A DNA stretch of 64,000 nucleotides from Selaginella moellendorffii (lineage: Eukaryota; Plantae; Lycopodiophyta): NCBI RefSeq assembly GCF_000143415.4, contig NW_003314286.1, positions 1,487,718-1,551,717 of the forward strand, given 5' to 3'. Below the pieces are notes generated by a model. The model made no database searches and was not told the origin of the DNA. It saw only the letters and a list, made by a program, of their open reading frames with translations. A program made the translations under genes and the position numbers. Positions 4,559 to 36,530 of this stretch are shown here, one piece after another (the stretch's first letter is position 1; each line of letters opens with the position of its first letter).

Positions 4559-7500
4559 ATGGCTGGAGCGCCTGGCGATGTTGCCGAGCTTCCTCCGCGC
4601 CTGGCGATCATGCTGTTTAGGAATCGAGTCCTGCTCCCGGGAGCTGTGGTGCGCATCCGATGCACGTCGCCGACCAAGTAAGCGCTTCTTAGGCCATCGC
4701 GTAGAATTTGGGAGCTAAAATGCGGGCGGTTTGATCGTTTTTCTCCCAGCGTTAGGCTGGTCGAGCAGGAGCTGTGGCAGAAGGAAGACAGGGGATTGAT
4801 TGGAGTTTTGCCTGCCAGGGATTTGCAGCAGTCCGATCCGGCGTCTCCGCCTCCGCCTCCGCCGCCACAGCAGCAGCAGCCTCCCCCGACTCAAGGCAAG
4901 GAAAATGCCAAGGAACTGTTTTGGGAGTTACCTGTGTGTTGATTGTATCTCCAGGCGATCGAGGTGGAACTGCGCTTCCAGATTTCCAGCAATGCCTGGG
5001 AAAGCAAAATCAAGAGCTCGTGCAATGGCATCCCCGGTAAGAATTCCAGAGTGTTTCCTGATGGGTCACGTAAGAATTTTTGTAGGGGTGTAGCAGCCCG
5101 AGCTTTGCATCTCTCTCGTGGCATGGAAAAACCAAGTGGTCGGGTTACGTACACCGTCGTTTTAGAAGGCTGGTGTAGGTTCAGTCTCAAGGACATGAAT
5201 GCTCGGGATTGGTCAGCTCGATATGACAAAAGCAGGTAGCTGATGAGGCGCAGCTGTTTTACTGCTTTGGTTTTTTTCTTGTAGAGATGGAGCAGGCGGA
5301 AAAAGATCCAGAGGTGCAACTTCTGGGACAACAGTTTAAAGTTGTTGCTAGCGAATTGATCTCTGCTTTGGAGCAGGTATTCTATCGGTACATGTTCTCG
5401 AATTGCTGATTGTTTGACGTCGTAGAAGCAAAGAACTGTGGGCCGCACGAAAATATTACTCGAGACAACCTCTGCCCACAGGCTTGCGGACATCTTTGTT
5501 GCAAATTTTGAGAACAACTTTGAAGACCGGCTAGCTATGCTAGACGCCGTCGACTTAAAACAGCGACTTGTGAAAGCGACTGAAATCATAACGCGCCATC
5601 TTCAGGTTCGTGCTGACTTTCGAGTTAAGCATCCAATTTAAACTCGTGTACTGTCTCTAGACAATCAAGGTAGCCGAAAAGATATCCCAGAAAGTGGAAG
5701 GAAATCTCTCGAAGTCTCAAAAAGAGTTTCTTTTACGTCAACAAGTACTGTATTACTTATGATCCGCAAGTTTGCTTTGTCCCTCATGCCGCTTTACAGA
5801 TGAAAGCGATCAAAGAGGAGCTCGGTGATAACGATGAGGACGAAGATGATGTGGTTGCTTTGGAGAAAAAGATGCAGAATGTGGGAATGCCGGCAAACGT
5901 ATGGAAGCACACACAGAGAGAGCTGAGGTAAGATATAATTGTGTGTCTATTTTCAGCTGAAATCTTGCTGCTTGCCATTTCATAGGAGGTTGAGGAAAAT
6001 GCAGCCTCAACAGCCAGGTTATGGAAGCTCAAGAGCTTATTTGGAACTCCTTGCTGAATTACCATGGCAGATAAGTAGCGAAGAACGTGAACTAGATCTT
6101 GTTGCAGCAAAGGAACGGTTGGATAGCGAGCATTATGGGCTGGGAAAAGTCAAGAAGCGGATTATTGAGTATTTGGCTGTACGAAAAGTATGTAAGCTAT
6201 CTTCAATCTTCTTTCCTTTCTAACTAATATTTTTGACAGTTAAAACCCGACGCGAGGGGCCCTGTCCTCTGCTTCGTAGGTCCTCCGGGTGTAGGAAAAA
6301 CATCCTTGGCGTCTTCAATTGCTGGAGCTTTGGGAAGACTTTTTATCCGCATTTCATTGGGCGGAGTGAAGGATGAAGCAGACATACGAGGTCATCGTAG
6401 AACATATATAGGAAGCATGCCGGGTCGACTGATCGAAGGCATTAAGGTATGGATTGTTTAAGTTTTTTATTCCTGATGTTTTCATCATATTGCCAGCGAG
6501 TGGGAGTCAACAATCCGGTCATGCTTCTGGACGAGATCGATAAAACAGGTACGGATGTCCGTGGTGATCCGGCATCTGCTTTACTGGAGGTCTTAGATCC
6601 GGAGCAGAATAGGACGTTCAATGATCAGTACGTATAGTACCTTCGCTTTGGTCATGCTTTTAACTTGTTTCTTTGCAGTTACCTCAACGTTCCATTTGAC
6701 TTATCCAAAGTGGTTTTTGTTGCCACGGCCAATAGGATTCAACCAATTTCACCGCCTTTGCTTGATCGCATGGAAGTGATTGAGCTACCTGGATACACTT
6801 CTGAAGAAAAGCTGTGTATAGCTATGCGACATCTCATTCCTAGAGTTTTTGATCAACATGGCATAACTGTGCAGCATTTAAAAATTCCAGAGGTATAAAC
6901 TGAGTTTCTGAAATGCTTGGTTTACCATTTCCGTGTTTGTAGGCAATGGTGGAGCTTATTATTCAGCGTTATACTCGTGAAGCTGGAGTTCGTAATCTAG
7001 AAAGGCATTTGGCAGCCCTTGCAAGAGCTGCGGCTGTCAAAGTTGCAGAAAGAGAGCATTCCATCCATGTTGCTCGAGAAGTTCAAGCTCAAACAACTAC
7101 TACTACAGTGGAAGCATGTGGACGAGGCGATGGTTGAAACAGTCCTTGGCGTAAGCTATACAATTTCCTTCTCTTCTTTTTCATTGTCACTAAACTATTC
7201 TTTCTCTACAGCCACCTAAGTTTTGGCAAAGAAGCGGCTGAAAGAGTGTCCACTCCCGGTGTGGCCGTGGGCCTTGTCTGGACGGCCGTTGGTGGTGAAG
7301 TTCAATTTGTCGAGGCCACGGCCATGACAGGGAAGGGTGATCTCAGCTGGGAGATGTTATCAAAGAATCTGCTCAGATTGCTCTCACATGGGTATGTTTA
7401 CAAAAAACTTTCGCTTGTATTCAATTGTTTAAACAGGTGAGAGCACGAGCTGCCGAGTTGAAGCTTGCAACTGGCGCGGAAAGAAGTTTAATGGATAGTC

Positions 7501-7772
7501 GAGATATTCATATCCACTTTCCAGCAGGTGCTGTGCCGAAGGACGGCCCTCCGCCGGTGTTACGCTTGTGACGGCCTTGGTGTCTTTCCTAGGGAAGAGA
7601 TGCGTGCGTGCTGACACCGCAATGATTGGTGAAATGACACTACGTGTTCTCGTGTTACCAGTAGGAGGAGTGAAGGACAAGGTAAGCTTTCAGTAATTCG
7701 CCTGCCTAACTTACGAGTGTTTCCTCGCAGATATTAGCTGCTCATAGGTTCGGTATCAAACGTGTGATACTT
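4559..7772 (+). pseudogene. Peroxisomal-type Lon protease (LON2-like), frameshifted and 3'-truncated
   Basis: MAGAPGDVAELPPRLAIMLFRNRVLLPG, Walker [52 protein letters not shown]. Apparent deletions near 5205, 7120 and 7342 and a 1-nt loss in KDGPSAG (~7548). Homology stops at ~7772 with no C-terminal PTS1. Confidence 0.85.
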
Positions 7773-9469
7773 GGAGCCGGGAGTTCCTCCAAACGCAGGA
7801 GCCAGTGGAGCCCGTGAGTATCCCGTTCCAATAAAGCAACACCCGTGCCCGACTGAGAGCCCTCCATAGACCGTCGAACCAGTGGTACGTTCCCACAGTA
7901 TACGTCCACTCTCTGCGTCCAGTTCGAGAACATGACCATCGTTGTCGAATGATCCGCAGAAGACCACACCGTTGGCGACAGTCACAGGCCCGTATGCTCG
8001 CGAACCGTGTGCATTCGCAGTGGACCATTCTATTCTTCCAGTAGCGGCTTCCATGGCCACCCAGCCACCAGCGGTGGTGCTTTCTCCGGAAGGAACGAGC
8101 TGGAACGTAGCACGGTCAGAGTTTGCGATGTTGGTGTATACTCGATGGTTGTCAGTGGCGGCTCCCCAGATCGCTCCACCTACAGAGCCACCAGGTCCGG
8201 CAGTCTTCACAAAACAGGGAAAACAAACGCAAGGTGACCAAGAAGAACAGGCTAGATATCAACAGGAGCTTGAGTTACCGTTTCCCAGACAAGGCTGCCG
8301 TCGTCTCGATCGTGAGCCCAAACAATGCCGCTCTTCTGACCGGTGACGACGATATCTTGGAACTTGTTCTTGGAGTAGCGGCTTGGGATCGTGAGCAGCA
8401 TCGGTGACTCTCCAAAGTCGTAGTCCGGCCCAGGCTCAGGCGCTGGTGGTGGATTTGTGTCACAAGCAAGCCTCTATACGTCGTTTCCTCCGAGCCTGTT
8501 ACGCCAGAGTATCTCACCGTCGGCCATGTTCACGGCTACAACGGTGTCGTCGCAGACGCCGCGAGGATAGCAGTCGCTCGAGTTGGCGTTTCTGTTGAGG
8601 CAGTCCTGGACGTCGCTCGGGATCTGGTAGAGGTTCCCAGTGCCAATGAAGACGAGTCCTCGCTTGGGATCGACGGAAGGACTGCTTCCCCATACCGAAA
8701 CGCCATAGAAACCGGAGTTTTCAGGAACCATGTCAGTTCTCCATCTTCGTTTTCCATTTTTGAGGTCTAGTTTCTGAAAGCTTCCCTGGAATGTGCAGCA
8801 GGTTGCCTCCACAAGCTCTTGGCGCGAAGAGATACCAACGTAGAAAGCTCTGCCAGAATTATAGGTACTCAAGAGCAGAGAAAAAGAAAAGAAAGGAAGT
8901 TTGCTTACCCGTCGTATGCTGTTCCTGACATGGTGATCCTTGCCCGGGCCGTTTCATCCAGATCTTCCGACATCCACACCAGTCTTCCACTCTTACGGTC
9001 TAAAGCAACAACTCTAGCGGGACCGAGCAAACCATATAGCAAGAGGTCCTCGGTCACAGCAGGTGTCGTCCGCGACAAAGTGGCAACTCGCGTGATTTCT
9101 GGCAAGTTGACGCGCCAGAGAAGTTGTCCTTGGATGGAAACTGCGAAGACGAACCCGTTCCACGAAGGGAAATAGACAACGCAGTCGTAAATCGCTGGTG
9201 TGGCTGAGATGTCTGCGCCAGCGTCAAAGCTCCACCTTTCGCTTAAGTGAGGCGCGCGCCAGACGCTGATGAAGTGCTCATCCTCTGCAAAGCGACGATT
9301 CTTGAGGTCTCCTCCGTGGCTGATACATTCGCCCGTCTGGAAAAAAAAAATGTCAAGGCAAGCTTATTTTCCTTTGTTTTGCTCTTTGTTGGACTACCTG
9401 ACAGTTGGATTCCACCTGCAGCAAAGATTGCGGCATCACGATCAACAAGAATACGAAAGAGTTCTTCAT
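7734..9469 (-). pseudogene. PQQ-repeat / polyvinyl-alcohol dehydrogenase-like gene, copy 2 (nonsense codon; 3' end fused to Lon)
   Basis: Signal peptide MKNSFVFLLIV, ATCCTFQGS, VWGSSPSVD, GGAIWGAATD, GPVTVANGVVF. TAG at 8474-8476 where copy 1 has TGG. Confidence 0.8.
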
Positions 9470-10140
9470 GGAGGGGGACTTGCGACTTTGCTCGAGAAAG
9501 AAATCTCAAGGTATGCTTTTCTAATATTTCTCTTTCGCGTGCTGGGTTTAGACAAAGACTTTTTTTCAGGCCGTGCAACACTCTGTTTGCAACACAAAGA
9601 CTTTGAAAGAGCACCACACAACGAGCACTCTCGGCTTTCAAGTGCGGTAACTTCGTGATGCTGGTAGGCAATGGATTGATCCTTCCAGTGTTCTGCTCGT
9701 TCGTGCTTGGCATCGTTCCAGTCTCGATCGTCCTCTTGTACTGCTAGTGCTAGCTGGGCGTAGCTTGCATTTTCCAAGTCTCAAAAGTAGAATCTTTTGC
9801 ATTCTCCCTTTTGCTCATGAAACATATTTTAAATGTGTTTTTTAATAATGAATATTTTTCATAGTTATCTCCCAGAGATTGCTTGGGCCCTGGATGGAGA
9901 CCATGCCAGCGTGAAACTTTCTTTCGTGGATATCTTCTTGGTCTTTTCTTGCAAAGACTGGTAGCAATGGCGGTGGGCGATCACCAAATGCGCGATAACT
10001 ACATGTAACCATGACACCTCAAACAGTTCGTGGAATCTTGAAAATTCGACATGCAAGCGTGCTTGCAACCAGGATCTTTCCCCTTGGATTTCAAAACTTA
10101 CATGACCGACCAAAACTTTACATGATCGAGCTCAAAAACT

Positions 10141-10588
10141 TTACATGATCGAGCACGCGGAATTGGGGTTCTCTGCGCTAAACATTGTGGTGATGCTGTC
10201 GTCGCGTACGGGCGGGCGAAAGCGCTGCTCGTATCCATAGTCATGATCATAGAGCTGCTCCTCGTACAGCGTCGCCATTGGCGTGTAGATGGCGACCTTG
10301 GGATCGTAGAGATGGGCCGGCCAAAGCTCCACGGGCTTGCCCGCCCTGCGCAGCCGCTTGATGATGCGCTTGGGGTCTGCAGTGCCCGTGATCGTCACCT
10401 TCTGAAGCTGCCGATCGATGTCGATGCTGTCGATCCCCGGCATGAAGAGCGCTCGCTTCACCAATCGCTCGCAGCGGTCAGAGTGCATCGGTACTCGCAG
10501 CTCGATAAGCTGGAAAGGAGCAGAAGAGAGAACGTCAGATTCTTAGCGATTCTTACAAGATCAAGAGTTTCACGGAACGTACCCCCAT
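10141..10588 (-). CDS. Heavy-metal-associated isoprenylated plant protein (HIPP)-like
   Basis: Exon 1 MG, intron, then LIELRVPMHSDRCERLVKRAL...QKVTITG...VELWP, ending TMFSAENPNSACSIM* (CaaX). Confidence 0.85.
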
Positions 10589-11060
10589 GTATTACAACTA
10601 GAGCTAGACGATCGGTTCCTCGCGTTTCAGGACAAAAGTGCTGCAATTTAGAAGAAGAAACGCTGCGATAATCCTTGATTCTGGGGGGGACGAGGAGCTA
10701 AACAACTATGATCCTTGACGTGAAAGCACTGGAAATGCTTTTCGATCTATGGAAAGAGCTCTCCACTCATGAATTCCCAGGCAAGAAATATGCTCTGTTG
10801 TGTGTGCTCCGTGTAGAGATTATAAAGACAGACACTGGCAACTGGCGGTTCCCCGACAGACAGTTGCCGGTTTGTAGGCGGCACGTAGGCAATTTCGAAG
10901 CACCCAAAGTCTTTGGAGGTATGTGGCGCAACACTGTTAAAGATACGAAACTTGTGATCTAGAATCTCACAACCAAGGCTCAAAAAAGAAAAAAAAAGAA
11001 AAAAAAAGAAGATTCTTTTCCAAAGCCTATTAACAATTAACTTATTGTGATGACAATGCC

Positions 11061-12849
11061 TTAGATCTTTTGGACTAGCAGCTGGATGCCAGTGAAGGAC
11101 TGGATCACGATTTGCACCGTGGGGTTGTGCCGGTAGTTTGGAGATAGCCGGAAGGAGAAATTTTGCAGCAGCATTGCGAGGACGACCTTGGCCTCCATCA
11201 CCGCGAGTCCCTGCCCAATACACACTCGGGGGCCGAAGCTAAAACCAAGGAAGGCGTTTGGATGCTTGCATGCCTTCGTCGTCCCATTCGCAAAGCGCTC
11301 CGGCCTAAACTCGTTCGCGTCCGGTCCCCACAGCTCCGGGTCGTGCTGGAGCGACAGGATGGGAATGGTGATCCCCGTCCCTCGAGGAAGCTTGATTCCA
11401 TTGCTGAGCACTGTGTCGTGGGTGCTCGCTCTGTTCATCTCCCCGGCAGCGGGGTAAAGCCTGAGAGTCTCAAGGATTATCATACCAACCTGGAAGAAAT
11501 GTGACATTCTTGGGAACTGGAAAGAAGAAAAAAAGAACTTGAGAGCTTACCACTTTGAGCTTGCTCAGAGTTTCTCCATCGTCCACTCCATTGGGAAAGT
11601 GTTGCTGGACCTCGGCTCTGGCTTTCTCTTGCCAGTCCGGGTGTGTTGCGAGCAATAAGAGCGCCCAGGCCAGTAATGAGGAACTCGTTTCGTGGCCAGC
11701 GAGGTAGAAAGTCTTGCATTCGTCCACTATAGCTTGCTCGGGAAACTTCACAGACTTACCGCCCGTTTCACCTTCCTCGAGGATCAAGCCCAACAAGTCG
11801 CTTCCATATGGATGAGACGATCTCTCTCCCAGCTTAGCAGCGGCGATTCTTCGCTCTCGGATCAATGACAATAGAGTGCCATCGATTTCTCTGCGTAGCT
11901 TCCATATCTGGAAGTTTAGCTTTGTAGGAAGATACCTGTGAGAGCTGACTGCTATCGATTAAACACTCAAAGAATGGTTTTGTACCTGAAGAATGGTAGC
12001 CACGAGTTGTGGAAACATCTCACCAGCAGCACTCCCAGCAGAGTTAATCCTTGGAAAACTCGCTCGCCTTTCTCGTAGTTGCTACCAAACGAGGTGTGGG
12101 ATATGACATCAGCCGCCAGCCTTTTGAGGTCTTGTTGGACTTCCACCTCGGTTTCTAGTCCTTCGGCTTGCCCCACGCGCCTGCTCCACTTCTCCACCAG
12201 CTTTTCAGTACATTTTGTCATGGAAGAAAGCATTGCCTGGAAGAAAGATAATAAAAAAAGTGAAAGAATCGAAGTTAGAAAAGACCACCTTGAGCCTCTC
12301 CGTGTGAAAGGCAGGAGAGAGGACGCTTCTGTGGTGCGACCATTTATTTCCATTCAATCCAACGAGACCGGCGCCGATGAAGTCCAGCACAAACTCGAGC
12401 TGCTGCTCCGATTTTTCGAATTTGTCGAACTGCTTGGAGAGAATCTCTCGGATGGAGTCGGGGTCGAAGACTACAACCCTCGGTTCGCTCAGCCACCGTA
12501 CGAGATACGGTTTTCCTGCGCGAGAAAAAACGCAGTGAGCAAACAAGCAAGCAAACAAGCAAGCGGAACAAAGAAACTTACCGTATAGCTTGGACCAGGC
12601 AGCAACGTCGGGGCTCACATGAGCAACAATGTCGTGACTTATTCCATCCATGCCTTTGTTCCTCACGGCTTCTCTCCTGAATAATATCTCCACGACGTTT
12701 CCAGCCAGAAAGATTGGAGGTGGTCCTTTGAGCCCTTGGCCGCGGAGAGCCGCTTCCAACTTCCTCATGTGCCACAATTTTAGCCCGCTTCGACAAATTC
12801 TCTCCAGGAACACGCAGATAGCGAGCGCCAGAGCCAAACTTCCCCACAT
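11061..12849 (-). CDS. Cytochrome P450, CYP72 clan, about 5 exons
   Basis: N-terminal TM, LRGQGLKGPP, ADVISHTSFGSNY, DECKTFYLAGHETS, ETLR, PERF, FSFGPRVCIG. Confidence 0.92.
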
Positions 12850-13497
12850 TTTTTCCTTCCCTCCTCAACTCAGCTGTTCCCTTGGATTTTACACTGGTGG
12901 ATTTTATTCACACCGCCTACTATTGGTCCACGTGTATTATGAGTGTGAAAAAAAACACAGGCATAGAATATTTTACGAATATCCAATCGTTATACCCTGG
13001 ATGGGGCATCATGCCCATAGAAATGACCCATGCTATGTATGGAATGGAGCCATTCATGGCCCATAGACCCATTCATCCCATGCATTCTACCAAGTTGTTA
13101 ATGTTGCAAACCAAATGGACAATCAACTAAATTGTTTATCTAGAGCAATATGTTCTCACATCTTGCTCTTGGTGTTCATGGCAAAAGAATTGAATATCTT
13201 TTTTTGGCACACCTCTTTTAACATAGTGCTCATAGCAAGCATAAGTGAACTCCATTTAGCTCCATTGCAAAGCCATGGATATATATTATTTGGAGTTATG
13301 TCTTTAATGGATCCCATTGAGTTTATTTTTTGTTGCAATTGATTTCTAGTGTAGCTTTCTCAACACTTGAGTTTTGTATTATGATGCTTAGAAGATTTGC
13401 ATATGACTCAAAAGTAGATTGAAGTCTAACCAATTCGATGAATTGGTGGGGCTCATACTTCAATTGTGTACTATGCAAAGGTGCATAGTGTTGATGT

Positions 13498-13711
13498 TTG
13501 GACCTAGAGTTCTCTCAAGAGGAGCATGCTGAAGGAGATTTGAGAATGTGGAAGTTACAATTGCATGTAGTAACATTCAGGATAACAATAGACACTTTCA
13601 ACATTTTTCAATTATAATTGTTTCGAATTGGACCTAGAGTTCTCTCAAGAGGAGCATGCTGAAGGAGATTTGAGAATATGGAAGTTGCAATTGCATGTAG
13701 TAACATTTAGG
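13498..13711. repeat. Two ~83-bp direct repeats, 131 bp apart
   Basis: ttggacctagagttctctcaagaggagcatgctgaaggagatttgagaat...gtagtaacatt at 13498 and at 13629. Confidence 0.9.
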
Positions 13712-13954
13712 TGAGAAGAGCAATGACAATGGACAATATTTTCCAATCATAACCGTTTCAAATTTTAAAATTTGTAAAAAGGGTTTCCAAGCATGGGGCA
13801 AAACTATCCAATGTATGCCATGCACTGCGGCCGAAGAACTAGAGTTTTCAGGGATTGGAAGTTTGTGCTCACTTTGGTAAGAGTAAATTTGTAACAGCTT
13901 CCTATATGGTCTAACCCTTTTGCAATATTTGAGGTTTTTAGGTTTCCTTTTGGC

Positions 13955-14341
13955 ATGGCAAACTGGAGAGGATTCTATGACTTCTTTGAGGAACAACAAT
14001 GGATCCAACAGGGGATAGGACCGAGGATTCTATATGATGCCTCCTCCTCTCAAGGCTCGACAATCCCTCCAACAAGGCAGCCCAAGACTACTTCTAATCT
14101 TGTGCCAATCACCAAGGGGAAAGGTCTTGCTAAAGAAAGCGCTAGTGAGGGATATATTACTGCTCGAGATGCAAGTGAGGACGAGTTCACAGACCCAGAG
14201 GGTGATTTTGGTTCTACCATGAAACAGGTTGAGAGTTCCTCAAGCGAGGATGGGCATCATGTACCACCCAAGCTCGATAGTTTTGACTCAGAACCTAAAT
14301 TGGGAGTTGCTTTGGAAAGCTATAGTGATTATCCTTGGTGA
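13955..14341 (+). other. Unassigned ORF inside the transposon, convergent with the HECT gene
   Basis: 128 aa with an acidic/Ser-rich tail. The frame extends upstream to ~13790 through a single TAA. No recognisable domain. Confidence 0.3.
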
Positions 14342-14513
14342 GGCAAGCATAAGCCAAAAGGGTACCAAGGGCTGCAAATGCCTATAATGGGCATTTGTGG
14401 AATACTTTGAATATTCTTACCTTTAACTTTGCCAATGAACTGGAAAGAGTCTTTTTCAAAGTGTGAAACATATTTCAAGATAATTATCTATTTTTATTGT
14501 AAAAGTGTCTACA

Positions 14514-17500
14514 TTACTTCCACAACATCAACCCAATCCATACAAGTTCTCTAGATTTTGGAGTGCCTAGTGGATCTTGTGTTTGGTCCACTCCTTTGAC
14601 GGGTATGTAAAGGGAAGAAAACTTCTCGTGTGCATGTGGAGAACCTGGGAAATTGAGTAAATGATGTACTCTGTCTCTTAATTTGGATCCAAATAGGCTC
14701 TCTTGGTTGGAACTCTGGAGAATCAACTGCAAAGTGATGGAACTTGGATAACTCTTTCGGGCTCATATCTATAAAATGTTCAAACATACAAGATTTTTAG
14801 TTGTTTGTGAAAGTAAATAGTTACCTCGAATGATGTCTACAATCCAGCTGCGAAATTTTTCTCCAAAGTCCTGATCAAAGATCAGGTAGTTGATGAACTC
14901 CACGGGAGGAATGATCGTCCTTACTCGGAAGACCTGTAACAAAGCATCTGTCCCAATGAGTGAAAGCCCACCTAGCAATGCTGGACTCTTGTAAGGCCTC
15001 TGATGAGCTTCCATGCGCATTGAGTGTTGGAAGCCATCTCGGAGTAAGTTTCCCACTACGTTTGGCTTGATGAATAGGTAACACCAAACCACCATAGCCA
15101 CACATGCTTCCACAGCCTACTCATAACCTTCACCAAGTTCGGTGAGTCTAAACTCAAGCACTACATTGTAGTCAGTAATTGCAGGGTTCTCTAGGATGGA
15201 ATCCACAGACTTGCGCCGATCGCCCTTCTCCTTTAGGTTTGATGCACCTCGCAATTGGTTGAGTGCATTCCAGATATGCGGCGCGCATGCCTTGAAGTCC
15301 ATCTCATATAGTCCTCCTCGGGCAAGTCGTCGGTCATCCTCGTTTGGAACCTCTCCAGCTGCAATTGCTAATGTTGCAATTGTACACCCGTGAGATACCT
15401 GTGCATTACATTTGAATGCTTGGAATAGCAACCATCCCACAAAGATAGCTTGTGCATATAGAAATGAGGAGCATATAAAACTTGTGCTTTAAACTTAACT
15501 TACCACATCCCGCTCTTCTTGTCGCAATGTCCTAGAATACACTGGCATCCTGGGATGCCAATATGTGGCTCCTTCTTTAAGCACAAATAGTCCACGCGTC
15601 TGTAACACAAAGTTACTTTAGTGAGCCAAGTGAAAATTAGACTTACCAATCCTGGAATCTGGTGAACAGCCTCCCTAATGGCTTTTGCATATGGCCCACC
15701 TGCATCTATTGTGGATTCCTCCCACACCAAAGCTCCTCCAACTCCAATTCATAGGCAATCCATTGCTTACCAGAATGCGAAACGGCCTCAAACATGTACG
15801 AGCAAGTCTGTATCGCCAAAGCATGGCTTTCTCAATGCAAAAACGAGAAAACTTACAATACAGTGTTTTAGTAGTGTCAAATAGTTCTCTCAATTATTGT
15901 GCAGCCGCCCAATTCCTACGTAGGTCCCTGCACAAAACCATAAGATGGTACTAAGTGCTAAGAAATAGATACACGTACCTCTTCTCAATGAACCATGCTA
16001 TTGTGAACTCAAGAATTGAAGAAGGCACATTGATATTTACTTCAGTAAGGAGCTGTTGGATTGTGTTGTCACAAAACACATCCTCGTACTGTGCTTCTGA
16101 AAGGCCAAGCTTAAGGAGAACACTCTCCCAATCTTGCCAATGAGGCATGGCTTGGTTGAAAAGCACGCGCCGCAGAAATATTTCACCGCCAGCCCAATGG
16201 AATTCAGGGTGTCTAGCAATAACGTCTAGCATCTCCTCGTCACTTGTGCTCTCCACGCCAAAGCAACCAAGAAGCTTGTGTTTCAGCCATTGCACCTGTA
16301 AGAGAACTTCAGCATCCCCCTGTGCCTTCACCTCAAGGGTTGTGGTGGCATCCTGTAAGGCAGAAACTTCCTCATGCTGCAGCATGATGAAGTTGGCATT
16401 ATCCTGAGTGGTTAATTGAACAGCTTCATTTAATGCATTGGTGGCATCAATCCATCTTTGTTGACGCTCCAACAATCTACATGCAAACATTAGTTCAATT
16501 TTGAATGGCACAATTTTCAATTATCTTACTCTACTGTAGAAAAGTTGTTAAGCAACTCCATAAGAGTAAACGGAGTGGAGCTACTTCCCTCTAGAAAGAG
16601 GGGTGGAGGCACACCATGGTCTTCAAGGCCTCCGCCATCACTGTCATACACTACCATTGGCTTATCTGCACTCAGAAATTAGAAAATGAAGAAAATATTA
16701 ATTTATGTTAATGCTGTAAGCTCCTGAGTTTGGACTTCCCGGGAGGTCACCCAGCCCAGTACTATTCAAACCCAAAGACGCTTAACCCCAAGTATCCCAA
16801 GACCCTTAACCGATTGGAAAAGGGGGTGCACTCTTGTTCATGGGCCCTTTCCCTCTATATTTGAACCCCATGGATCGTCTCTCAAGTCGTTCCCTTTGGT
16901 TGCTTACAATCCACCACGCTTCCCTGCAAGTTCACGCCCTCGTGAACGGAAGCTGAGAGCTGCAGCTCTCCCGAGAGCCCCGCTCTCTTGACACCCTACC
17001 CCTCGGGTCGAGCCCAGCGGGAGCAAACTGGACCAGCCAGATGTCAATCAACATGTGGTGTGATTCCCTTAGCCAACCAACAGAGTCGGACCCGAGACCT
17101 CTCTGATACCAAATGTAAGCTCCTGAGTTTGGACTTCCCGGGAGGTCACCCAGCCCAGTACTATTCAAACCCAAGGACGCTTAACCCCAAGTATCCCAAG
17201 ACCCTTAACCGATTGGAAAAGGGGGTGCACTCTTGTTCATGGGCCCTTTCCCTCTATATTTGAACCCCATGGATCGTCTCTCAAGTCGTTCCCTTTGGTT
17301 GCTTACAAATGCTTCTTACCGGCTGCATGGCCTAGAGCCACTATCTTTGGTGACAAGGATGTCTCCGAAGATCCTTGGTGCAGTTTATCCCCACCATCAC
17401 CTTGTTCTTCGACTTCGCTAATGTCTATGTTGTCTTGTGTGGGGAGAGTTTCTTCTGGTAATGGAAGAATGTCCTCTTCATCCGCAGAGTCTTCTTCTTC

Positions 17501-19200
17501 ATTATTCTCGTAAGGGTTTGGTTCCTGCGTGGCTGGCCTTGGATCATCATTTGCAGTCAAGGTATTTGTAGCAGCTACAACTGCAAAGACCACAACATAT
17601 ATTTGTGAGGAGGGAACTTAAAAAAAAAAAATGACTTACGTTTACGAACATCCTTTTCCTCGAGTGCTCGGGCCTGCTTTGGATAACTTAGCTAATGTTT
17701 GTCAGTAAGATGCTCCATAACATTGTATAGGTATATTACTGTTGCCCGATTGCCATTGGCCTTGTTTGCTATAGCTCCCCATGATGTTTGAGGAGGCCAG
17801 TAGCAAGGCTGGATAGAGCTGAGGCCAAATTTTGTAGACTCGGCATGGGCCTCACCACCATTGGATTGCCTTGCACGCCAGACAAATGCTCCTGGGTTGG
17901 TCATGGATGAAGGTTGGATTCCTGAGGCTTGGAGTGATAGTAGAATTGCATGTTGGGCTATGCCAGGCTGGAAAGGAATACTGGAGTATAAGCCACCCTA
18001 TATGAGACACTCTAGGAGGTCCACTGCCAGCTCGTCAAGTTCCGTCACCTTCACAGATGGATCTCTTTTCCGCCCATACAAGTGTACATGCCAAGTCTTC
18101 GGGATTGCAATCCACTTGGTGACAAGAACTGTGGTGAACGGTCGAGGGACCAAGGGTGTCGTAGACAACATCCCACCAATGACTTTGGATCGACTGCCAT
18201 GACGTCCATAATGACAAGATAAGGACTACCGATTGTTATTGGCATAGGTGTGCACTACAGCCACAATTGGTGAGAGAGTCTAGCACAGTGAAACGAAAAT
18301 GGGTTAAACAAATCCAAAGAAGAAAAAAAATGAAGAGTGCATGGGGTCATGTTATACCTATGGCTCACATGGCAACCCACCTTGAGGGTTAGCTTGAACA
18401 TATTTGAATGTCGAAGCTCCACTAGATGATGATGTTGATCCTCGGGAGTAGTTGTGGAATGCTGATGGGGAACTATAAGCTCGCTGATGTGGCAGCATTG
18501 TCAACTCACCCTACACAGAAAAACACATGGAAAAAAAAATGGGTACAAATGAAAAACGTACCAAGCTAGACCGCTTGTTGCTTCGGGAGGTAGATGGCCA
18601 GGTATTGGCACTTGTACCGGTAGATGGAGTTGCGAGAGTTGTAGCGGTTGGTGGAGTTGTGGGGCTGGTAGCAGTAGCACTATATGGGGTTCCGTGAGCA
18701 CGTCCTGTAGTTGGTGTTGGTGGCAGCATTCCAGATTGGACAACACCATAGGCATGAGGCGTTCTGACTTGCTCATTTCGAATGCTCGAGCTGCTACTTT
18801 CCAAGGAAGGTGAGGAGAATGAAACATGCTGAAGGTTCCGCATATGTTGCAATGTATGCAATGTTAGGCGGCACTCTGCTTGCTCAAATGCAGTCAGAAG
18901 CTGTGGATGGGATGCTGTTGGAGTTGATGTCTCTGGTGCGGAGCTTGGAAAATCAAGTGGTTGGCGTGTGTCTCGCGGGACTGTTGGCTGTACTGATTGC
19001 GGAACATTAAGTGCTTGGCTGCGTACTCGTGAAGTGTTTCCTGCATAGTGTGTACTACTGTTGAGGCGTGTGGTGTTCTTGCTTCGAGCCTAGAAACCAC
19101 AAAGGATTGGTTATGCAAACCTGATCGAGGAGAAGCTACCCATCATCACAGCTGTGGCGCTCTCACTTGGGCGGTGGTCCTGCGATCAGGGGAGTGTGCA
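14514..19200 (-). pseudogene. Multi-exon HECT-domain E3 ubiquitin ligase-like gene of the transposon, interrupted by Cassandra; 5' limit approximate
   Basis: Ser/Thr/Pro-rich N-terminal exons and an acidic linker, then WEESTIDAGGP (HECT N-lobe start), GWLLFQAF, FIDMSPKELSKFHHFAVDS and FPRFSTCTREVFFP (catalytic Cys context). Confidence 0.65.
16715..17307 (-). mobile_element. Cassandra-type TRIM retrotransposon, full length (593 bp)
   Basis: Two 194-bp TG..CA LTRs (16715-16908 and 17114-17307) with one difference seen; 5-bp TSD AATGC; tRNA-iMet PBS TGGTATCAGAG on the minus strand (17101-17111); purine-rich tract next to the other LTR; 5S-like core GTTAAGCGT...TAGTACTGGGCTGGGTGACCTCCCGGGAAGTCC in each LTR. 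Confidence 0.93.
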
Positions 19201-19412
19201 CTAGAAGCCTTGCCTCCGGTTAGATGACAGGAATCGATTGGAAGAACAAACAAACCATCGACAAAATCATGTCATAAAATGAAATTGCCCCATATCCAAG
19301 GCACAATTAATATGGGTGGGACTTGGTGAAAACCCTAATCCCAAATGTGGGAACCCTAAAATTGAACAAATCAGGAATTGAATTTAAATTTGAAATGTAC
19401 ACTAAAGAACAC

Positions 19413-21150
19413 TCAATTTTCTCCGAGTATGGCCAAGTATAATTTTTCCAAAGCTCGTCGCTTCACTAGTGTTGCTGTAGGCAAGGCACTCTCAATGTAA
19501 AGTGGTAGATCTACACCCGCAGCATCAGCCATTGCACACTTCTTTGTTAGATCCAAATGAAGTAGATATTGCTCATCTAAGTTGAGTCCCTCCCGATGCA
19601 TAAAAAATGCCTGGTTTTGAACAGTGCCAAGAGCCTATAAGGTAGCCAAGCACAACAAAATAGATTTAAAGAAATTGTTGTATTCTTGCTCTAAAGATTA
19701 CCTCTAACAAAGTTGCACCTTCGACATTAGAGAGAAATGGTCCCGAAAGGTCTTCAATATCTTTTCCACCAACAGCCGGCATAATCCTACAAAAACACAT
19801 TTTATCAGGAATTCTGTAACATTACCAAAATTGTTACCCAAGCTCTCGTTCCATCAGTTGAAATAAGTTTGCAGGAACATGAGATGGTCTGAAGTAATCA
19901 CCACATCAATACGGACGGACCTCATGGAGGTTCCAAGTTGCAACCCAGTGTGAAATATCCTTCTTGAGGTACAGAGCAAAGACACAACGTAGACTCTGGT
20001 TGTGCCATGGATTAGATACATCGAGAATTCCTATATCTTCCATGAACTCAAAAAGGTGCTTATAAAACCACACCACACGCTCAAAGAGCTCTCTCCACAA
20101 ATGCTCTATGCTCTGTAAAACACATTTGATTTAGTCCTATGAGTCCTTATTTGGAAAAACTCTAATGCTGTGAGTACCTAGTTATGTATTGACGTCCCAC
20201 ATATGAAGCTCCTAGCTGCAGGACCCCAACAGCGGATCATGTCCCTCTCAACCTCATTGTGCTCTAGAGCATTGTCGCTCCGAATGTGTTTGGGCCTTCC
20301 AAATCGACGAACAGCTTGTGCATATGTGTTAAATATTGCATGGGATTCTTTGGAGGTAGATAGCTCCCAAGTTACAATATAATGAGTTGCCCCGCAAATA
20401 ATGGCATGTACATAGAAACCATAGCTTACAAGCTTGCAATATGCTACAATAAACATGTTACCACATGTGTTGATAAAAAAGCAGAAATGAAAGAATACTC
20501 ACAATCCATATGGCAAAGTGCATAAGCCTCATCGTTCCTATAAATCCGTCGTCAAATCCTTGTCATGTGCCTCTGTTCCAGCCTACTTGGATCGTGAGTG
20601 GCTAAAGCCTCATGAATTTGGCGTCGGCTAAATCAATATCCTCCAGTTTGACAGCTAGATCGGGAATTGATAATCCCTCAGTTTGTGCCACCTCGATTCA
20701 TGGCATTGTTAGTTCGAACGTGATGAAGTACCTCTTTGGGTGGTACTCTATAATATACACCTCTCCAATTTGGATCGACAAGCCGCATTTATTTGTACAG
20801 TGTTGGCTTGGAAATTCTAAGACAGCATGTGAGGTAAGCAGTAGTCTTAGTCTTAAGGATCTTCAAGTGCATCCAAGTGCCAAATGCAGCTGGACTACAG
20901 AATCCCCTCGATTGCAAAAAATTATAAAAGGCCTAGAAACATGCAAATCATGAATCTAGGAGGCTGGAAACTAACAAACCTTTGGGAGAGCATCGTTGTC
21001 ACTATCCATATTGGAACCACACTCTGAATCACTAAAATTGGATGGAAGGCCATCCACTTCATCTTCCTCCACCTCTTCTAGTAAACCTGGAAGAAAAAGT
21101 TTCAGTGACACAAATTTGAAGTAAACTAGGGAGGGAACTATACTCATAGT
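19413..21150 (-). pseudogene. Spliced DDE transposase, IS3/rve integrase-core type; 5' limit approximate
   Basis: RRIYRNDEAYALCHMD/SYCKLVSYGFYVHAIICGATHY...AVRRFGRPKHIRSDNALEH...SFICGTSIHN*/SIEHLWRELF...MEDIGILD...WVATWNLHEVR. The D, D and E are visible; TAG at ~20178 where Gln (CAG) is expected. Confidence 0.85.
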
Positions 21151-21621
21151 AGGAACTTAAAAGTCCATAGAGAACAATCGAGTAGTAAATCAAAGCCACT
21201 TCTAACACTGCCCACAAAAACATTTCAAACCACTCACTAGCAAACTAAGTTACCTTTCACATCGACTACCAAGAAACATGCCGAATAATAGAGCACTAAA
21301 GCAAGGCACTAAGGCAGGGAAGCATCTCCTAAACCCTATGACCTAATGAATCCCCATGTCATGGGGTCAAACTTAATGATATGTGGCATCTATGTGTAAC
21401 ACATTGTTTATATTATGGGGACATCATTGACCCATTGGCCAGCATCCATGGGGCATTCATGAGGCATCCAAATGACATTTAATGCTGAACCAATAGAAAA
21501 CTGCCACATGAACACTGTATTATGAGTGAAATCTACCGCAGTAACACTCACCCTTTTACGAATTGCATGCCATATGTTCGCCACTCGTGGTATATGGGGG
21601 TAGAAAAGAGTAAAAAACTCG

Positions 21622-23658
21622 TCATATATATGTACGATGGACGATTTCCCCGGTGCTGTCGTCTTGCCCCATTTGTTTTTTAGTCTTGTGCCTCGTCGCC
21701 AATGGAATCCGGCTGTTGGAAAGCAGCACGAATCCCGCTCCAGAGCTTGGATCAGAATCAAAAACCAGTGTTGCTGCTCGGGCCCCATGGAAGCCGTCAC
21801 TGTGGCTCCGACTAGCGGCCAAGAGAGTAATCCAATCGATGGAATCAGCAGCAAATGGCATGTTGGCCAGCAGCTCGTATGCATGCTCCAAGTATCCTCC
21901 TCGGCCCAGGAGATCGACCATGCAGCAGTAGTGCTGTTTCTTAGCTCGGATCCCATAGTCGCTCTCCATGGACGTGAAGTAGCATCGGCCGTCGTAAACT
22001 CGAGCTCCGCAGCTACACGAGATGAGGATCGAGACGAAGGATATGTCGTCCGGCGTGTAGAGCGCTCTCATATAATCAAAAGTTGATCTTGCTTGGTGGG
22101 AGTGGCCGTTTAGAGAGTACGCCGCGAGCATGGCACCGCAAGATATCCGGTTCTGCTCCGGCTGGCGAGTGAAAATCTTCTCGGCTTGTGCCAAGCGTCC
22201 GTTGCGAGCGTAGGCGCCGAGAATACAAGTCCAGGAGATTTCATCGCGGTGTGGAACACCAGAGTAGAACAGGCACTCGGCTTCCTCAAGCTGAGCAGCC
22301 ATGGAATACGCGGCGATCATCGTGGTCGACGAAACCATGTCGTGCTGCGGCATCCGGTCGAACAGATCCTTGGCCGAGTTGAGATGGCTCTTCACGGCAT
22401 AGGCAGCGAGGAGAGAGTTCCATGAGACCAAATCCTTGCATGGAAGCTCGTCAAAAACTTGCTTTGCATTCTCCACGCTTCCAGCTTGCGCATAAGAAGC
22501 CAAGAGAGCGTTGCATTGCACCAAGTTTACCTCCGGCAACTTTGCAAACATCTCCTTGGCGTTTTCCAAGAGGCCATTTTGGGTGTAGCCCGTGAGCATG
22601 GCATTCACGCTCACCACATTCTTCTCGGGCATCCGATCAAACAAGTCCTTTGCTCTGGCCATATCCCCGTGCTGAGCAAACGCCGCCAGCATCGAGTTCC
22701 AAGATACGAGGTTCCACTGTGGTATCTCGTCAAACATGTCTTTGGCCTCGGCCAGCTTCCCGTCCCGAGCAAGCGCGGCCAGCATCGAGTTCCACAAGAC
22801 CGTGTTGGCCTCGTAGCTCGCTGAAACGCTGTCAAAGAAGCTCTTTGCCCGTCCAAAGTGGCCGTTTTGGGCGTAGGCGACGAGCATTGAGTTCAGGGAC
22901 ACAAGATTGTGCTCGGGCATGCGCTCAAACGTCCGCTTTGCTTGCTCCATATGCCCGTTTTGGGCATATGCCGCAAGCAAAGCGTTCCAAGACACAAGGT
23001 TCCGCTGTGGCATTTCTCGGAAACATTTTTCAGCCTCTTCAGTGTCTCCCTCTTGCGAGTACGCAGCTAAAAGTGATGTCCAGCAGAACAAATCATGCTC
23101 AGGCATAGTATCAAACACCGTAAGCGCTTCCGCAAGATGCCCATTCTGGGCATATGCTACAAGAAGAGCATGCCAAGCTACCAAGTCCAACATGGGAATC
23201 TGATCCAACAGCGCTTTAGTAAGACCAAAATTCCTGACTTTCGAGCTCGCAATCACCATGCTCGTCCACGAAACCAAGTTGGCCTCCGGCATCCGCGAGA
23301 GGAGATCGCTGGTGAGCTCGAGATCCCCGTTTCGAGCGGCCGCCGATAGCAGCGTGTTCCACGCGAGTACACTATGCTGCGGCATTCGGTCCAGCAGCAG
23401 CGCCATAGCTTCTCGGATAAACCCGTTGTCGCAGTAGGCGGCGAGCATCAGGATCCAGGAAAAGATGTCCTTGCGCTGGATGCTGTGGAAGGCCGCAAGC
23501 GCCAAATCCACGCGGCCGTGCCGCCCGTGCATGGCGATGAGCTTGTTGAGGACAAAGAGATCGCGGCCATGGTGCGATCGCGCAAGCCGCTCGACGTCGC
23601 GCGCTTGGGACGGGCTCGCACAGCTCCGGATGAGAGCCAAGCACGCATCGCGCTCCAT
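21622..23658 (-). CDS. PLS-class PPR protein (long run of short S/SS motifs), E domain, no DYW
   Basis: Intronless ORF of repeated F..MP..NLVSWN.LL.AYAQ.G motifs, then HYCCMVDLLGRGG...W..LL.A...GFVLLSN. Confidence 0.92.
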   Translation of the reverse strand: MERDACLALIRSCASPSQARDVERLARSHHGRDLFVLNKLIAMHGRHGRVDLALAAFHSIQRKDIFSWILMLAAYCDNGFIREAMALLLDRMPQHSVLAWNTLLSAAARNGDLELTSDLLSRMPEANLVSWTSMVIASSKVRNFGLTKALLDQIPMLDLVAWHALLVAYAQNGHLAEALTVFDTMPEHDLFCWTSLLAAYSQEGDTEEAEKCFREMPQRNLVSWNALLAAYAQNGHMEQAKRTFERMPEHNLVSLNSMLVAYAQNGHFGRAKSFFDSVSASYEANTVLWNSMLAALARDGKLAEAKDMFDEIPQWNLVSWNSMLAAFAQHGDMARAKDLFDRMPEKNVVSVNAMLTGYTQNGLLENAKEMFAKLPEVNLVQCNALLASYAQAGSVENAKQVFDELPCKDLVSWNSLLAAYAVKSHLNSAKDLFDRMPQHDMVSSTTMIAAYSMAAQLEEAECLFYSGVPHRDEISWTCILGAYARNGRLAQAEKIFTRQPEQNRISCGAMLAAYSLNGHSHQARSTFDYMRALYTPDDISFVSILISCSCGARVYDGRCYFTSMESDYGIRAKKQHYCCMVDLLGRGGYLEHAYELLANMPFAADSIDWITLLAASRSHSDGFHGARAATLVFDSDPSSGAGFVLLSNSRIPLATRHKTKKQMGQDDSTGEIVHRTYI

Positions 23659-32520: not shown

Positions 32521-32529
32521 AAGGGAAAG

Positions 32530-32723
32530 TGTAAGCTCTTGAGTTTGGATTTCCCGGGAGGTCACCCAACCCAATACTATTCAAACCCAAGGACGCTTAA
32601 CCCCAACTATCCCAAGACCCTTAACCAATTGGAAAAGGGGGTGCACTCTTTTTCATGAGCCCTTTCCCTCTATATTTGAACCCCATGGATCGTGTCTCAA
32701 ATCCTTCTCTTTGGTTGTTTACA
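32530..32723 (-). mobile_element. Cassandra solo LTR
   Basis: 194-bp homologue of the 16715 LTR, TG..CA ends, perfect TSD GAAAG. Confidence 0.92.
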
Positions 32724-36359: not shown

Positions 36360-36530
36360 TGTAAACTCCTGAGTTTAAACTTCCCAGGAGGTCACCCAAC
36401 CCAGTACTATTCAAACCCAAGGACACTTAACCCTAAATATCCCAAGAAAAAAGGGGTTTCATAGGCCCTTTCCTTTTATATTTGAACCCTAACGGATCGT
36501 CTCTCGAGTCGTTGCCTTTGGTTGCTTATA
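36360..36530 (-). mobile_element. Older, internally deleted Cassandra solo LTR inside the gypsy RNase H
   Basis: tgtaaactcctgagttt...ttcccaggaggtcacccaacccagtactattcaaaccc...gttgcttata; no matching TSD. Confidence 0.85.

What the first reader, a model, noticed from the sequence alone, without database searches (positions are those of the whole stretch)
12890..21594. IS3EU-like DNA transposon (IS3-type DDE transposase plus HECT ligase gene) in a land-plant genome
Seen: a spliced transposase with motifs RRxY..L.H.D..KL..YGF.VH, RSD and G.S.HN.[S]IE.LW, followed on the same strand by a long spliced gene ending in a HECT-like domain. Known (from memory): this integrase-core type and the transposase + HECT pairing characterise the IS3EU superfamily, which I recall from animals and fungi rather than plants. 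It does not resemble the usual plant DNA transposons (hAT, Mutator, CACTA, PIF/Harbinger, Tc1/mariner). Inference: a plant IS3EU-like family, either ancient or horizontally acquired. It has host-style short introns and carries a plant Cassandra insertion, so it is resident and not contamination. This copy is dead (TAG at ~20178, frameshifts).
Basis: partly seen in the sequence, partly recalled or inferred. Interest (0 to 1): 0.82.

Follow-up and report, generated by a model that had tools for sequence, protein, structure and literature searches.

The report
Dead GingerRoot transposon with HECT gene
This stretch is a long-dead copy of a GingerRoot (IS3EU-type) jumping gene, a kind already described in spikemosses, and it also carries a decayed ubiquitin-ligase (HECT) gene that the papers on these elements do not mention.

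Summary
On the minus strand, window 21574 to 12883 is one copy of a multi-copy DNA transposon of Selaginella moellendorffii. It sits between a PPR gene and a P450 gene.

- **Gene 1** is a spliced DDE transposase (Pfam rva_4).
- **Gene 2** ends in a very diverged HECT domain.
- **A 593-bp Cassandra TRIM** sits in an intron of gene 2. It is absent from four other copies.

Five further copies define the ends: TA..TA termini, an inverted repeat of about 26 to 54 bp, and a 5-bp target duplication. All copies are broken and decay neutrally.

The transposase is IS3EU-type, but this lineage is already catalogued in plants as GingerRoot (S. lepidophylla, 2019) and was merged with IS3EU in 2023.

Two things go beyond the papers I could search: the 5-bp rather than 6-bp duplication, and the HECT partner gene. 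I also found Pfam-HECT genes next to rva_4 transposase genes in a green alga, a whitefly and a sea cucumber.

The scan met this family before on other DNA: s1-341407 agrees, and s1-419785 denied the HECT gene.

The parts
12883..21574 (-). Whole GingerRoot/IS3EU-type transposon copy (8,692 bp including the Cassandra insert); 5' end at 21574, 3' end at 12883
   Evidence: Collinear blastn to five other S. moellendorffii copies, all starting at 21574 and ending at 12883. Pairwise identity is 90-97%.
21521..21574 (-). 5' terminal inverted repeat (26 bp near-perfect core 21549-21574, beginning TATGGC; about 54 bp imperfect)
   Evidence: Terminal 24-mer found once in the window and at both ends of L003, L010 and L011 in inverted orientation.
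12883..12912 (-). Inner remnant of the 3' TIR; the outer ~24 bp (..GCCATA) present in the other copies is deleted here
   Evidence: End alignment of copies.
21575..21579 (-). 5' copy of the 5-bp target-site duplication (GAACA on the minus strand)
   Evidence: Flank of the 5' terminus. The 5-bp TSD is perfect in L002, L003, L010 and L011.
12875..12879 (-). Probable 3' copy of the TSD (GAACA), 3 nt beyond the end of homology
   Evidence: Sequence read directly. This is an inference, because the terminal 24 bp are missing.
19413..21087 (-). Gene 1: spliced transposase (acidic N-terminus, HTH-like exon, rva_4/DDE core); stop TGA at 19413-19415
   Evidence: Pfam rva_4 on two exons. Exon map by alignment to the sister-copy model. 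Models P0003 and P0005 end at the same ..AILGEN stop.
20504..20506 (-). First catalytic Asp codon (..CHMD), followed by a 59-nt intron 20502-20444
20274..20276 (-). Second catalytic Asp codon (IRSDN)
20104..20106 (-). Catalytic Glu codon (SIEHLW)
   Evidence: Aligns with the IS3EU HNQRIERLW motif in the published alignment.
20178..20180 (-). Premature TAG at the conserved Gln of the HNQ-IE motif
   Evidence: Copy P0005 has Gln here.
20113..20177 (-). 65-nt GT..AG intron inside the transposase core
20552..20554 (-). In-frame TGA just upstream of the RRIY motif
14551..19142 (-). Gene 2 (about 950 codons when intact): Ser/Thr/Pro-rich part, acidic part, helical part (189-aa ORF 15954-16520), C-terminal HECT domain; stop TAG 14551-14553. 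The start is not defined.
   Evidence: ORF pieces. Sister-copy models P0151, P0152 and P0153. Exon map.
14554..15748 (-). HECT-like domain exons (broken by a ~100-bp deletion near 15740 and a -1 frameshift in the last exon)
   Evidence: Pfam HECT E 2.2e-4 and 3.7e-4 on the equivalent part of P0151 and P0152. ESM Atlas: 29 of 30 nearest clusters are HECT, with TM 0.53-0.60 to HECT ligases.
14632..14634 (-). Codon of the presumed catalytic Cys (..FSTCT..)
   Evidence: It lies 34 residues from the C-terminus in P0151, the usual HECT position.
16715..17307 (-). Cassandra TRIM insertion (593 bp, TG..CA, LTRs 16715-16909 and 17114-17307, TSD AATGC at 16710-16714 and 17308-17312). It lies 12 nt into a 56-nt intron of gene 2.
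   Evidence: Empty site in L003, L004, L010 and L011.

Best explanation
Window 21574-12883 (minus strand) is a defective, nearly full-length copy of a cut-and-paste DNA transposon family of Selaginella moellendorffii. The family belongs to the IS3EU/GingerRoot superfamily. When the family was active, gene 1 made a transposase with an N-terminal helix-turn-helix part and an rve-like DDE core. That enzyme would bind the TA-ended inverted repeats, excise the element and insert it with a 5-bp staggered cut, leaving a 5-bp target duplication. Gene 2, carried in tandem, encoded a roughly 950-residue protein ending in a HECT-type ubiquitin-ligase domain. I infer that it was an accessory protein that ubiquitinates a host factor or the transposase to help transposition or to blunt silencing. 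Shown: family membership by transposase, termini, TSD, copy number, linkage of the two genes, and decay. Inferred: the transposition chemistry (by homology) and any role of the HECT protein. This copy landed between a PPR gene and a P450 gene. It then lost the outer 24 bp of its 3' repeat, gained stops and frameshifts in both genes, and later received a Cassandra TRIM in an intron of gene 2.
For: The window is 100% identical to scaffold GL377590.1 of S. moellendorffii. Five other copies (L002, L003, L004, L010, L011) share the same ends. Termini are 5'-TATGGC...GCCATA-3'. TSDs are CTCTC, TTTTT, GAATG and GCTCA (perfect) and CAAGC/CAAAC. Pfam rva_4 hits both core exons. All 44 long relatives carry rva_4, often with an HTH domain, and none carries RT or RNase H. 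The published alignment shows S. lepidophylla GingerRoot rows with the same HMDSY-KL..YGF..H.II.GAT..IV and IFN.YA.AV motifs, and IS3EU rows with HNQRIERLW. Ginger1 and Ginger2 have HPQSNG..ER instead. HECT evidence: Pfam hit on the C-lobe, profile positions 213-301 of 306, in two copies. UniRef names P0151 a HECT domain protein. ESM Atlas feature score is 0.96 with 29 of 30 neighbours HECT, and structure TM is 0.53-0.60 over about 290 residues. Differences among copies show no codon-position bias, and exons change as fast as non-coding DNA, so the copies decay neutrally. Literature: PMC6839031, PMC10045372.
Against: The TSD is 5 bp, whereas the papers give 'usually 6 bp' for IS3EU and 6-8 bp for GingerRoot. 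The TIR is shorter than the 100-150 bp reported for S. lepidophylla. The HECT call rests on sub-threshold Pfam scores and on language-model and structure look-alikes. Pfam finds nothing on the window's own exons. phmmer against the PDB finds nothing. My AlphaFold model failed with pLDDT 30. hhalign and BLASTP to the whitefly HECT partner are not significant. I could not place the transposase in a tree with Repbase IS3EU or GingerRoot reference sequences.
Confidence: 0.88

Rival explanations
1. Gene 2 is not an original part of the element. It is a host HECT-ligase gene fragment picked up by this one family, as GingerRoot elements often pick up gene fragments.
For: 28.6% of intact S. lepidophylla GingerRoots carry host gene fragments (PMC6839031). 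The Selaginella HECT part has no significant sequence similarity to the HECT partners found in other taxa, so shared ancestry of the partners is not shown.
Against: Captured fragments in that paper are 84-1,654 bp and 79-98% identical to their parent genes. Here a gene of several kilobases with its own short introns is present. Its only relatives in the 5.8-billion-protein search are other copies of the element. It is so diverged that Pfam HECT stays below threshold. HECT genes lie beside rva_4 genes in three unrelated taxa. Elements of S. lepidophylla without gene fragments average 8.88 kb, the same size as this two-gene element.
Confidence: 0.1
2. It is a real, possibly domesticated host gene, as annotated: SELMODRAFT_414985, a 1,200-residue 'integrase core domain-containing protein'.
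For: A public gene model (P0001) spans the whole stretch.
Against: The model threads around stops and skips half of the DDE core. The locus has TIRs and a TSD and is one of at least six 90-97% identical copies. There are in-frame stops and frameshifts. Substitutions show no codon-position bias.
Confidence: 0.01
3. The integrase-like gene is a remnant of an LTR retrotransposon or of a Ginger2/TDD element. The 5-bp duplication is typical of both.
For: The TSD is 5 bp. Pfam rve also hits at E 1e-8. Cerbin et al. found the GingerRoot core close to a Gypsy integrase in their tree.
Against: There are no LTRs, RT, RNase H, HHCC or GPY motifs in any copy or in 44 relatives. The ends are inverted repeats ending in TA, not TG..CA. 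rva_4 scores well above rve. The HNQ-IE-LW signature is that of IS3EU, not the HSQSQG.IER of Ginger2.
Confidence: 0.01

Closest known systems
GingerRoot DNA transposons of Selaginella lepidophylla (Cerbin et al. 2019, PMC6839031)
   Same: Same plant genus. Integrase-like DDE transposase with the same core motifs in the published alignment. TA..TA termini and terminal inverted repeats. Element size is about 8.5-8.9 kb. No HHCC or GPY motifs.
   Different: The duplication here is 5 bp, not 6-8 bp. The TIR is about 26-54 bp, not 100-150 bp. S. moellendorffii is not named in that paper's main text. The paper says nothing of a second gene or a HECT domain (0 occurrences). All copies seen here are dead.
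IS3EU superfamily (Repbase; animals and fungi; merged with GingerRoot by Kojima and Bao 2023, PMC10045372)
   Same: The Pfam rva_4 core with HNQRIE-LW, an N-terminal HTH and TA..TA termini. Repbase protein names such as '1p' and '2p' imply more than one gene per element.
   Different: About 30-43% identity in the core. In my one-exon tree the Selaginella clade lies outside the 42-row animal and fungal clade, on the side of Coccomyxa. TSD is 5 bp against 'usually 6 bp'.
Ginger2/TDD transposons
   Same: Integrase-related DDE DNA transposons with a 4-5 bp duplication.
   Different: They have TG..CA termini and a different catalytic signature. Not a member.
Fungal DNA transposons carrying TET/JBP dioxygenase genes, including IS3EU families (Kojima 2025, PMC12730594)
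   Same: This is a 'works like' comparison only: a DNA transposon that carries a host-type enzyme gene, thought there to counter silencing.
   Different: The enzyme differs (ubiquitin ligase against DNA demethylation). No function is shown here.
Cassandra TRIM retrotransposons
   Same: A 593-bp non-coding element with two LTRs, each holding a 5S rRNA-like segment. TG..CA ends and a 5-bp duplication.
   Different: Nothing unusual. The 5S matches are 1-3 bits below Rfam's gathering score.

Membership tests
IS3EU/GingerRoot superfamily | DDE transposase with the IS3EU-type core (Pfam rva_4; ..H.D..KL.., ..R.D.., HNQRIE.LW) | tested here: met
   rva_4 E 5.9e-14 and 1.5e-14 on the two core exons. 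Motif-by-motif agreement with the IS3EU and SL_GR rows of the published alignment.
IS3EU/GingerRoot superfamily | No HHCC zinc finger, GPY/F or chromodomain, and no RT or RNase H (separates it from Ginger1 and LTR elements) | tested here: met
   Pfam on P0001, P0002, P0152 and 44 relatives shows only rva_4, rve and HTH families.
IS3EU/GingerRoot superfamily | Termini 5'-TA..TA-3' with terminal inverted repeats | tested here: met
   TATGGC...GCCATA in L002, L003, L004, L010 and L011, and at the window's 5' end. About 26 bp near-perfect and about 54 bp imperfect. This is shorter than the 100-150 bp of S. lepidophylla.
IS3EU/GingerRoot superfamily | Target-site duplication of 6 bp ('usually' in IS3EU; 6-8 bp in GingerRoot) | tested here: not met
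   5 bp in four perfect cases and one with a single mismatch. 6-bp readings fail in every copy. The papers give this as a usual, not invariable, trait, so I treat it as a family-level variant.
IS3EU/GingerRoot superfamily | Placement inside the clade in a tree with Repbase IS3EU and Cerbin GingerRoot reference transposases | not testable with these tools
   Reference sequences were readable only as supplement text and cannot be passed to the tools by reference. A partial tree with database relatives has the Selaginella clade at 98% SH-aLRT, outside the animal and fungal clade.
HECT-type E3 ubiquitin ligases | HECT domain (N-lobe plus C-lobe) recognised by profile or fold | tested here: inconclusive
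   Pfam HECT scores 21.4 and 20.7 bits against a cut-off of 23.9, C-lobe only, on P0151 and P0152. There is no hit on the window exons. ESM Atlas features score 0.96, with 29 of 30 neighbours HECT and structure TM 0.53-0.60. My own AlphaFold model was unusable.
HECT-type E3 ubiquitin ligases | Catalytic Cys about 35 residues from the C-terminus | tested here: met
   ..FSTCT.. with the Cys 34 residues from the end of P0151. The window codon is 14632-14634.
HECT-type E3 ubiquitin ligases | Ubiquitin thioester formation and transfer | not testable with these tools
   This needs biochemistry, and all copies seen are broken.
Cassandra TRIM | Short non-coding element with two LTRs that each contain a 5S rRNA-like segment | tested here: met
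   LTRs of 195 bp, 99.5% identical, 399 bp apart. 5S_rRNA scores 37.1 and 35 bits against a gathering score of 38.
Ginger2/TDD | TG..CA termini and the HSQSQG.IER-type catalytic signature | tested here: not met
   Termini are TA..TA and the signature is HN(Q)SIEHLW.

The most novel reading that the evidence does not exclude
The HECT ubiquitin-ligase gene is an ancestral, conserved accessory gene of the whole IS3EU/GingerRoot superfamily, from green algae and lycophytes to insects and echinoderms. It is fast-evolving because it targets host factors, such as silencing or repair proteins. This would be a transposon-borne E3 ligase that the published descriptions of these elements have overlooked.
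Probability: 0.4. Interest if true: 0.6.

Novelty: new member of a known kind. Interest (0 to 1): 0.36.

Why it matters
As a transposon it is ordinary. It adds S. moellendorffii to the hosts of GingerRoot/IS3EU, and it shows that several public 'hypothetical protein' models (SELMODRAFT_414985, 412061, 413916, 413917, 421051, 407700, 424697) are decayed transposon genes.

The part worth following is the second gene. If a HECT ligase is a regular passenger of this superfamily across kingdoms, these elements would join the small set of DNA transposons that carry an enzyme to act on the host. Examples are the TET/JBP genes in fungal transposons. The many lineage-specific 'uncharacterised HECT' genes in animal genomes might then be transposon genes.

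The 5-bp duplication also widens the stated 6-bp hallmark of the superfamily.

Tried and rejected
**HECT searches that gave nothing**
- Pfam HECT on each window exon and on the longer ORFs of L003 and L004: no hit, even at E up to 10.
- phmmer of HECT exons and of P0151 against PDB sequences: nothing relevant.
- AlphaFold2 of P0151 with a 4-row alignment: pLDDT 30, unusable, so no fold search was run on it.
- BLASTP and hhalign of the Selaginella gene 2 against the whitefly HECT partner P0191: not significant.
- tblastn of P0151 and P0152 against the alga, fungus, echinoderm, insect and metagenome loci: only marginal hits.
- ESM Atlas on the 189-aa ORF: uninformative bacterial TPR look-alikes.

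**Other searches that led nowhere**
- Searches for relatives of gene 2, of the whitefly HECT exon, and of long rva_4 fusion proteins returned only self hits or near-identical copies.
- TIR search around the alga, sea cucumber and whitefly gene pairs: no convincing ends. It is therefore not shown that those pairs are single mobile units.
- Fungal locus L006 and metagenome locus L013: no HECT found beside the transposase.
- No second copy of the element in the window.

**Readings rejected**
- A 6-bp TSD and shifted termini were tested and rejected.
- Selection on either gene was tested by codon position and rejected.

The window's sequence was searched exon by exon. Whole-gene queries used public gene models of this and sister copies.
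Full report
**What is there**

The window is Selaginella moellendorffii. A fetched stretch of scaffold GL377590.1 (GCA_000143415.2) is 100% identical over 13 kb. An earlier scan note said the same.

The finding lies on the minus strand between a PPR gene (stop at 21622) and the first exon of a P450 gene (ATG at 12849). The public annotation covers it with one fused model, SELMODRAFT_414985 (P0001, 1,200 aa). That model threads around stops and skips part of the catalytic core.

**Transposase**

- RRIYRNDEAYALCHMD, then a 59-nt GT..AG intron (20502-20444), then SYCKLVSYGFYVHA
- IRSDN
- GTSIHN, TAG (20178-20180), a 65-nt intron (20177-20113), then SIEHLW

Pfam rva_4 (PF24764) matches both core exons at E 5.9e-14 and 1.5e-14, and rve is weaker. 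The TAG replaces a Gln kept in a sister copy (NQRIEHLW in P0005). A TGA lies at 20552-20554.

An exhaustive phmmer search with the 106-residue exon gave 200 hits at E up to 0.001. The best are S. moellendorffii models. After them come Coccomyxa (a green alga), fungi, the whitefly Bemisia, the sea cucumber Apostichopus, a jellyfish, and metagenome fragments.

All 44 long hits carry rva_4, often with an N-terminal HTH. None has reverse transcriptase or RNase H.

**Family and literature**

GingerRoot was described in 2019 from S. lepidophylla (PMC6839031). It is also reported there in S. tamariscina, mosses, fish and corals. The paper gives it a 6-bp duplication, TA..TA ends and 100-150 bp inverted repeats.

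Kojima and Bao (2023, PMC10045372) showed that IS3EU and GingerRoot form one lineage with bootstrap 99.

Their published alignment shows the following:
- S. lepidophylla row SL_GR-020 has LWHMDSYDKL..YGFRFHGIIDGATRFIVAC and IFNNYARAVKKYG.
- The window has LCHMDSYCKL..YGFYVHAIICGATHYIVTW and IFNTYAQAVRRFG.
- IS3EU rows carry HNQRIERLW.
- Ginger1 and Ginger2 carry HPQSNG..ER instead.

So the transposase is IS3EU/GingerRoot by signature. I could not feed those reference rows into a tree.

A one-exon tree with database relatives puts the four Selaginella rows in one clade (98% SH-aLRT). That clade lies outside the 42-row animal and fungal clade, on the side of Coccomyxa.

**Limits, ends and duplication**

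| Copy | Scaffold | Position in fetched locus | TSD |
|---|---|---|---|
| L003 | GL377587.1 | 9784-18324 | TTTTT |
| L010 | GL377634.1 | 5665-14156 | GAATG |
| L011 | GL377572.1 | 5237-13694 | GCTCA |
| L004 | GL377614.1 | 8967-19133 | CAAGC / CAAAC |
| L002 | GL377582.1 | 13159-8744, rearranged | CTCTC |

All five align with window 21574 down to 12883. The ends are 5'-TATGGC...GCCATA-3'. The inverted repeat is about 26 bp near-perfect and about 54 bp imperfect.

The duplication is 5 bp, and no 6-bp reading works in any copy.

The window copy has lost the outer 24 bp of its 3' repeat. The pentamer GAACA that flanks its 5' end recurs 3 nt past the break.

Copies are 90-97% identical. Their differences are spread evenly over codon positions, and exons change as fast as non-coding DNA. 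Every copy has stops or frameshifts against the best model. The family is therefore extinct, or at least all sampled copies are relics.

**Gene 2 and the HECT domain**

Downstream of the transposase stop (19413-19415) lies a gene of about 950 codons with short introns (47-105 nt in the sister-copy model). It has four parts:
- a Ser/Thr/Pro-rich part
- an acidic part
- a helical part, seen as the intact 189-aa ORF 15954-16520
- exons from about 15748 to 14554 that read like a HECT domain (..VWEESTIDAGGP....FPRFSTCTREVFFP..)

Formal support is mixed.
- **Pfam:** HECT misses the window exons. It hits models of two sister copies (P0151, P0152) at E 2.2e-4 and 3.7e-4. That is just below the gathering score, on profile positions 213-301 of 306, at the very C-terminus.
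- **UniRef** calls P0151 a HECT domain protein.
- **ESM Atlas,** residues 395-747 of P0151: 29 of the 30 nearest clusters by language-model features are HECT, with a top score of 0.96. All eight structural neighbours listed are HECT families, with TM 0.53-0.60 over about 290 residues.
- **The presumed catalytic Cys** lies 34 residues from the end.

I take the HECT reading as likely, about 0.8. This agrees with earlier scan note s1-341407 and disagrees with s1-419785.

The window copy of the domain is broken by a ~100-bp deletion near 15740 and a -1 frameshift in the last exon.

**Is the pairing general?**

No searchable paper holds both 'IS3EU' and 'HECT'. The GingerRoot and IS481EU papers never mention HECT or ubiquitin.

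I looked at the neighbours of rva_4 genes in four annotated genomes.

| Organism | Locus | HECT gene position | Orientation relative to transposase |
|---|---|---|---|
| Coccomyxa | L005 | 2.4 kb upstream | same strand |
| Apostichopus | L007 | a few kb downstream | opposite strand |
| Bemisia | L008 | about 5 kb downstream | opposite strand |
| Ephemerocybe (agaric) | L006 | none found | n/a |

I re-checked the HECT hits myself: 32.5, 28.0 and 43.8 bits, all above the cut-off of 23.9.

HECT genes are a tiny fraction of any gene set, so three of four by chance is very unlikely. That is an inference, not a computed test.

I could not show that those pairs lie inside one mobile unit. I also could not show that the ligases are related to the Selaginella one beyond the fold.

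**Cassandra**

Window 16715-17307 is a 593-bp TRIM with TG..CA ends. It has 195-bp LTRs with one mismatch, a 5S rRNA-like segment in each LTR (37.1 and 35 bits), and a duplication AATGC.

It sits 12 nt into a 56-nt intron of gene 2 and is absent from the four other full copies. It therefore arrived after this copy inserted.

**Verdict**

The classification as IS3EU-like, the linkage with a HECT gene, residency and death of the copy are all supported.

The claim of novelty in plants is not supported, because GingerRoot is exactly this lineage in this genus.

What remains beyond the papers I could read:
- the species
- a 5-bp rather than 6-bp duplication
- a shorter repeat
- the HECT partner gene and its recurrence beside rva_4 transposases in an alga and two animals

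Repbase and Dfam entries could not be consulted, so the partner gene may already be known to their curators.

**Method note**

The window's genes were searched exon by exon, by reference. I made no joined or repaired protein from them. Whole-gene queries used public gene models.

Noticed in passing
window 12849-12883 and 21574-21622: The transposon fills almost the whole space between the two host genes. Its 5' end is 48 nt past the PPR stop codon, and its truncated 3' end is 34 nt before the annotated P450 ATG. Without it the two coding regions would be under 100 bp apart, so the P450 promoter or 5' UTR must now lie in or across the element's end, or the annotated start is wrong.
   Followed up: no
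window 32527-32723 and 36360-36531: Further Cassandra-LTR-like segments (93% and 78% identical to the LTRs at 16715-17307). They lie in a markedly AT-rich part of the window (GC 0.29-0.39 between 32 and 40 kb).
   Followed up: no
window 13955-14341 (+), equivalent to L003:16476-17066 (-) and L010:12377-12967 (-): A small acidic ORF antisense to the two main genes near the 3' end of the element. It has no Pfam hit and is interrupted in L004 and L011, so there is no sign that it is kept.
   Followed up: partly
window 13498-13764: An approximately 130-bp tandem duplication (84-96% identical units) in the 3' non-coding part of the element, present in all copies.
   Followed up: no
L004:12623-14489 and L004:5957-6009: The L004 copy carries a 1.9-kb insert full of short tandem repeats (translating as ..DGVRDGV.. 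and ..SPRW.. runs). A second 3' end of the element, with the same flanking sequence as the real 3' end, lies 3 kb upstream of the copy. This suggests a local duplication.
   Followed up: no
L002:8744-13159: This copy is internally deleted (most of gene 2 is missing) and has an inverted middle segment. The public model SELMODRAFT_412061 (P0002) stitches sense and antisense pieces together.
   Followed up: partly
P0004 (SELMODRAFT_416308, scaffold of 1.9 Mb): A second, more distant rva_4 fragment in S. moellendorffii (58% identity to the window exon). It hints at another GingerRoot family in the genome.
   Followed up: no
L008 (Bemisia tabaci OU963862.1) and L007 (Apostichopus japonicus CM075714.1): In both animals the rva_4 gene and the HECT gene are convergent and a few kb apart. 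In Bemisia the pair lies inside an intron of a Groucho/TLE-like gene. Both are annotated as 'uncharacterized protein' with isoforms, so they may be intact or domesticated.
   Followed up: partly
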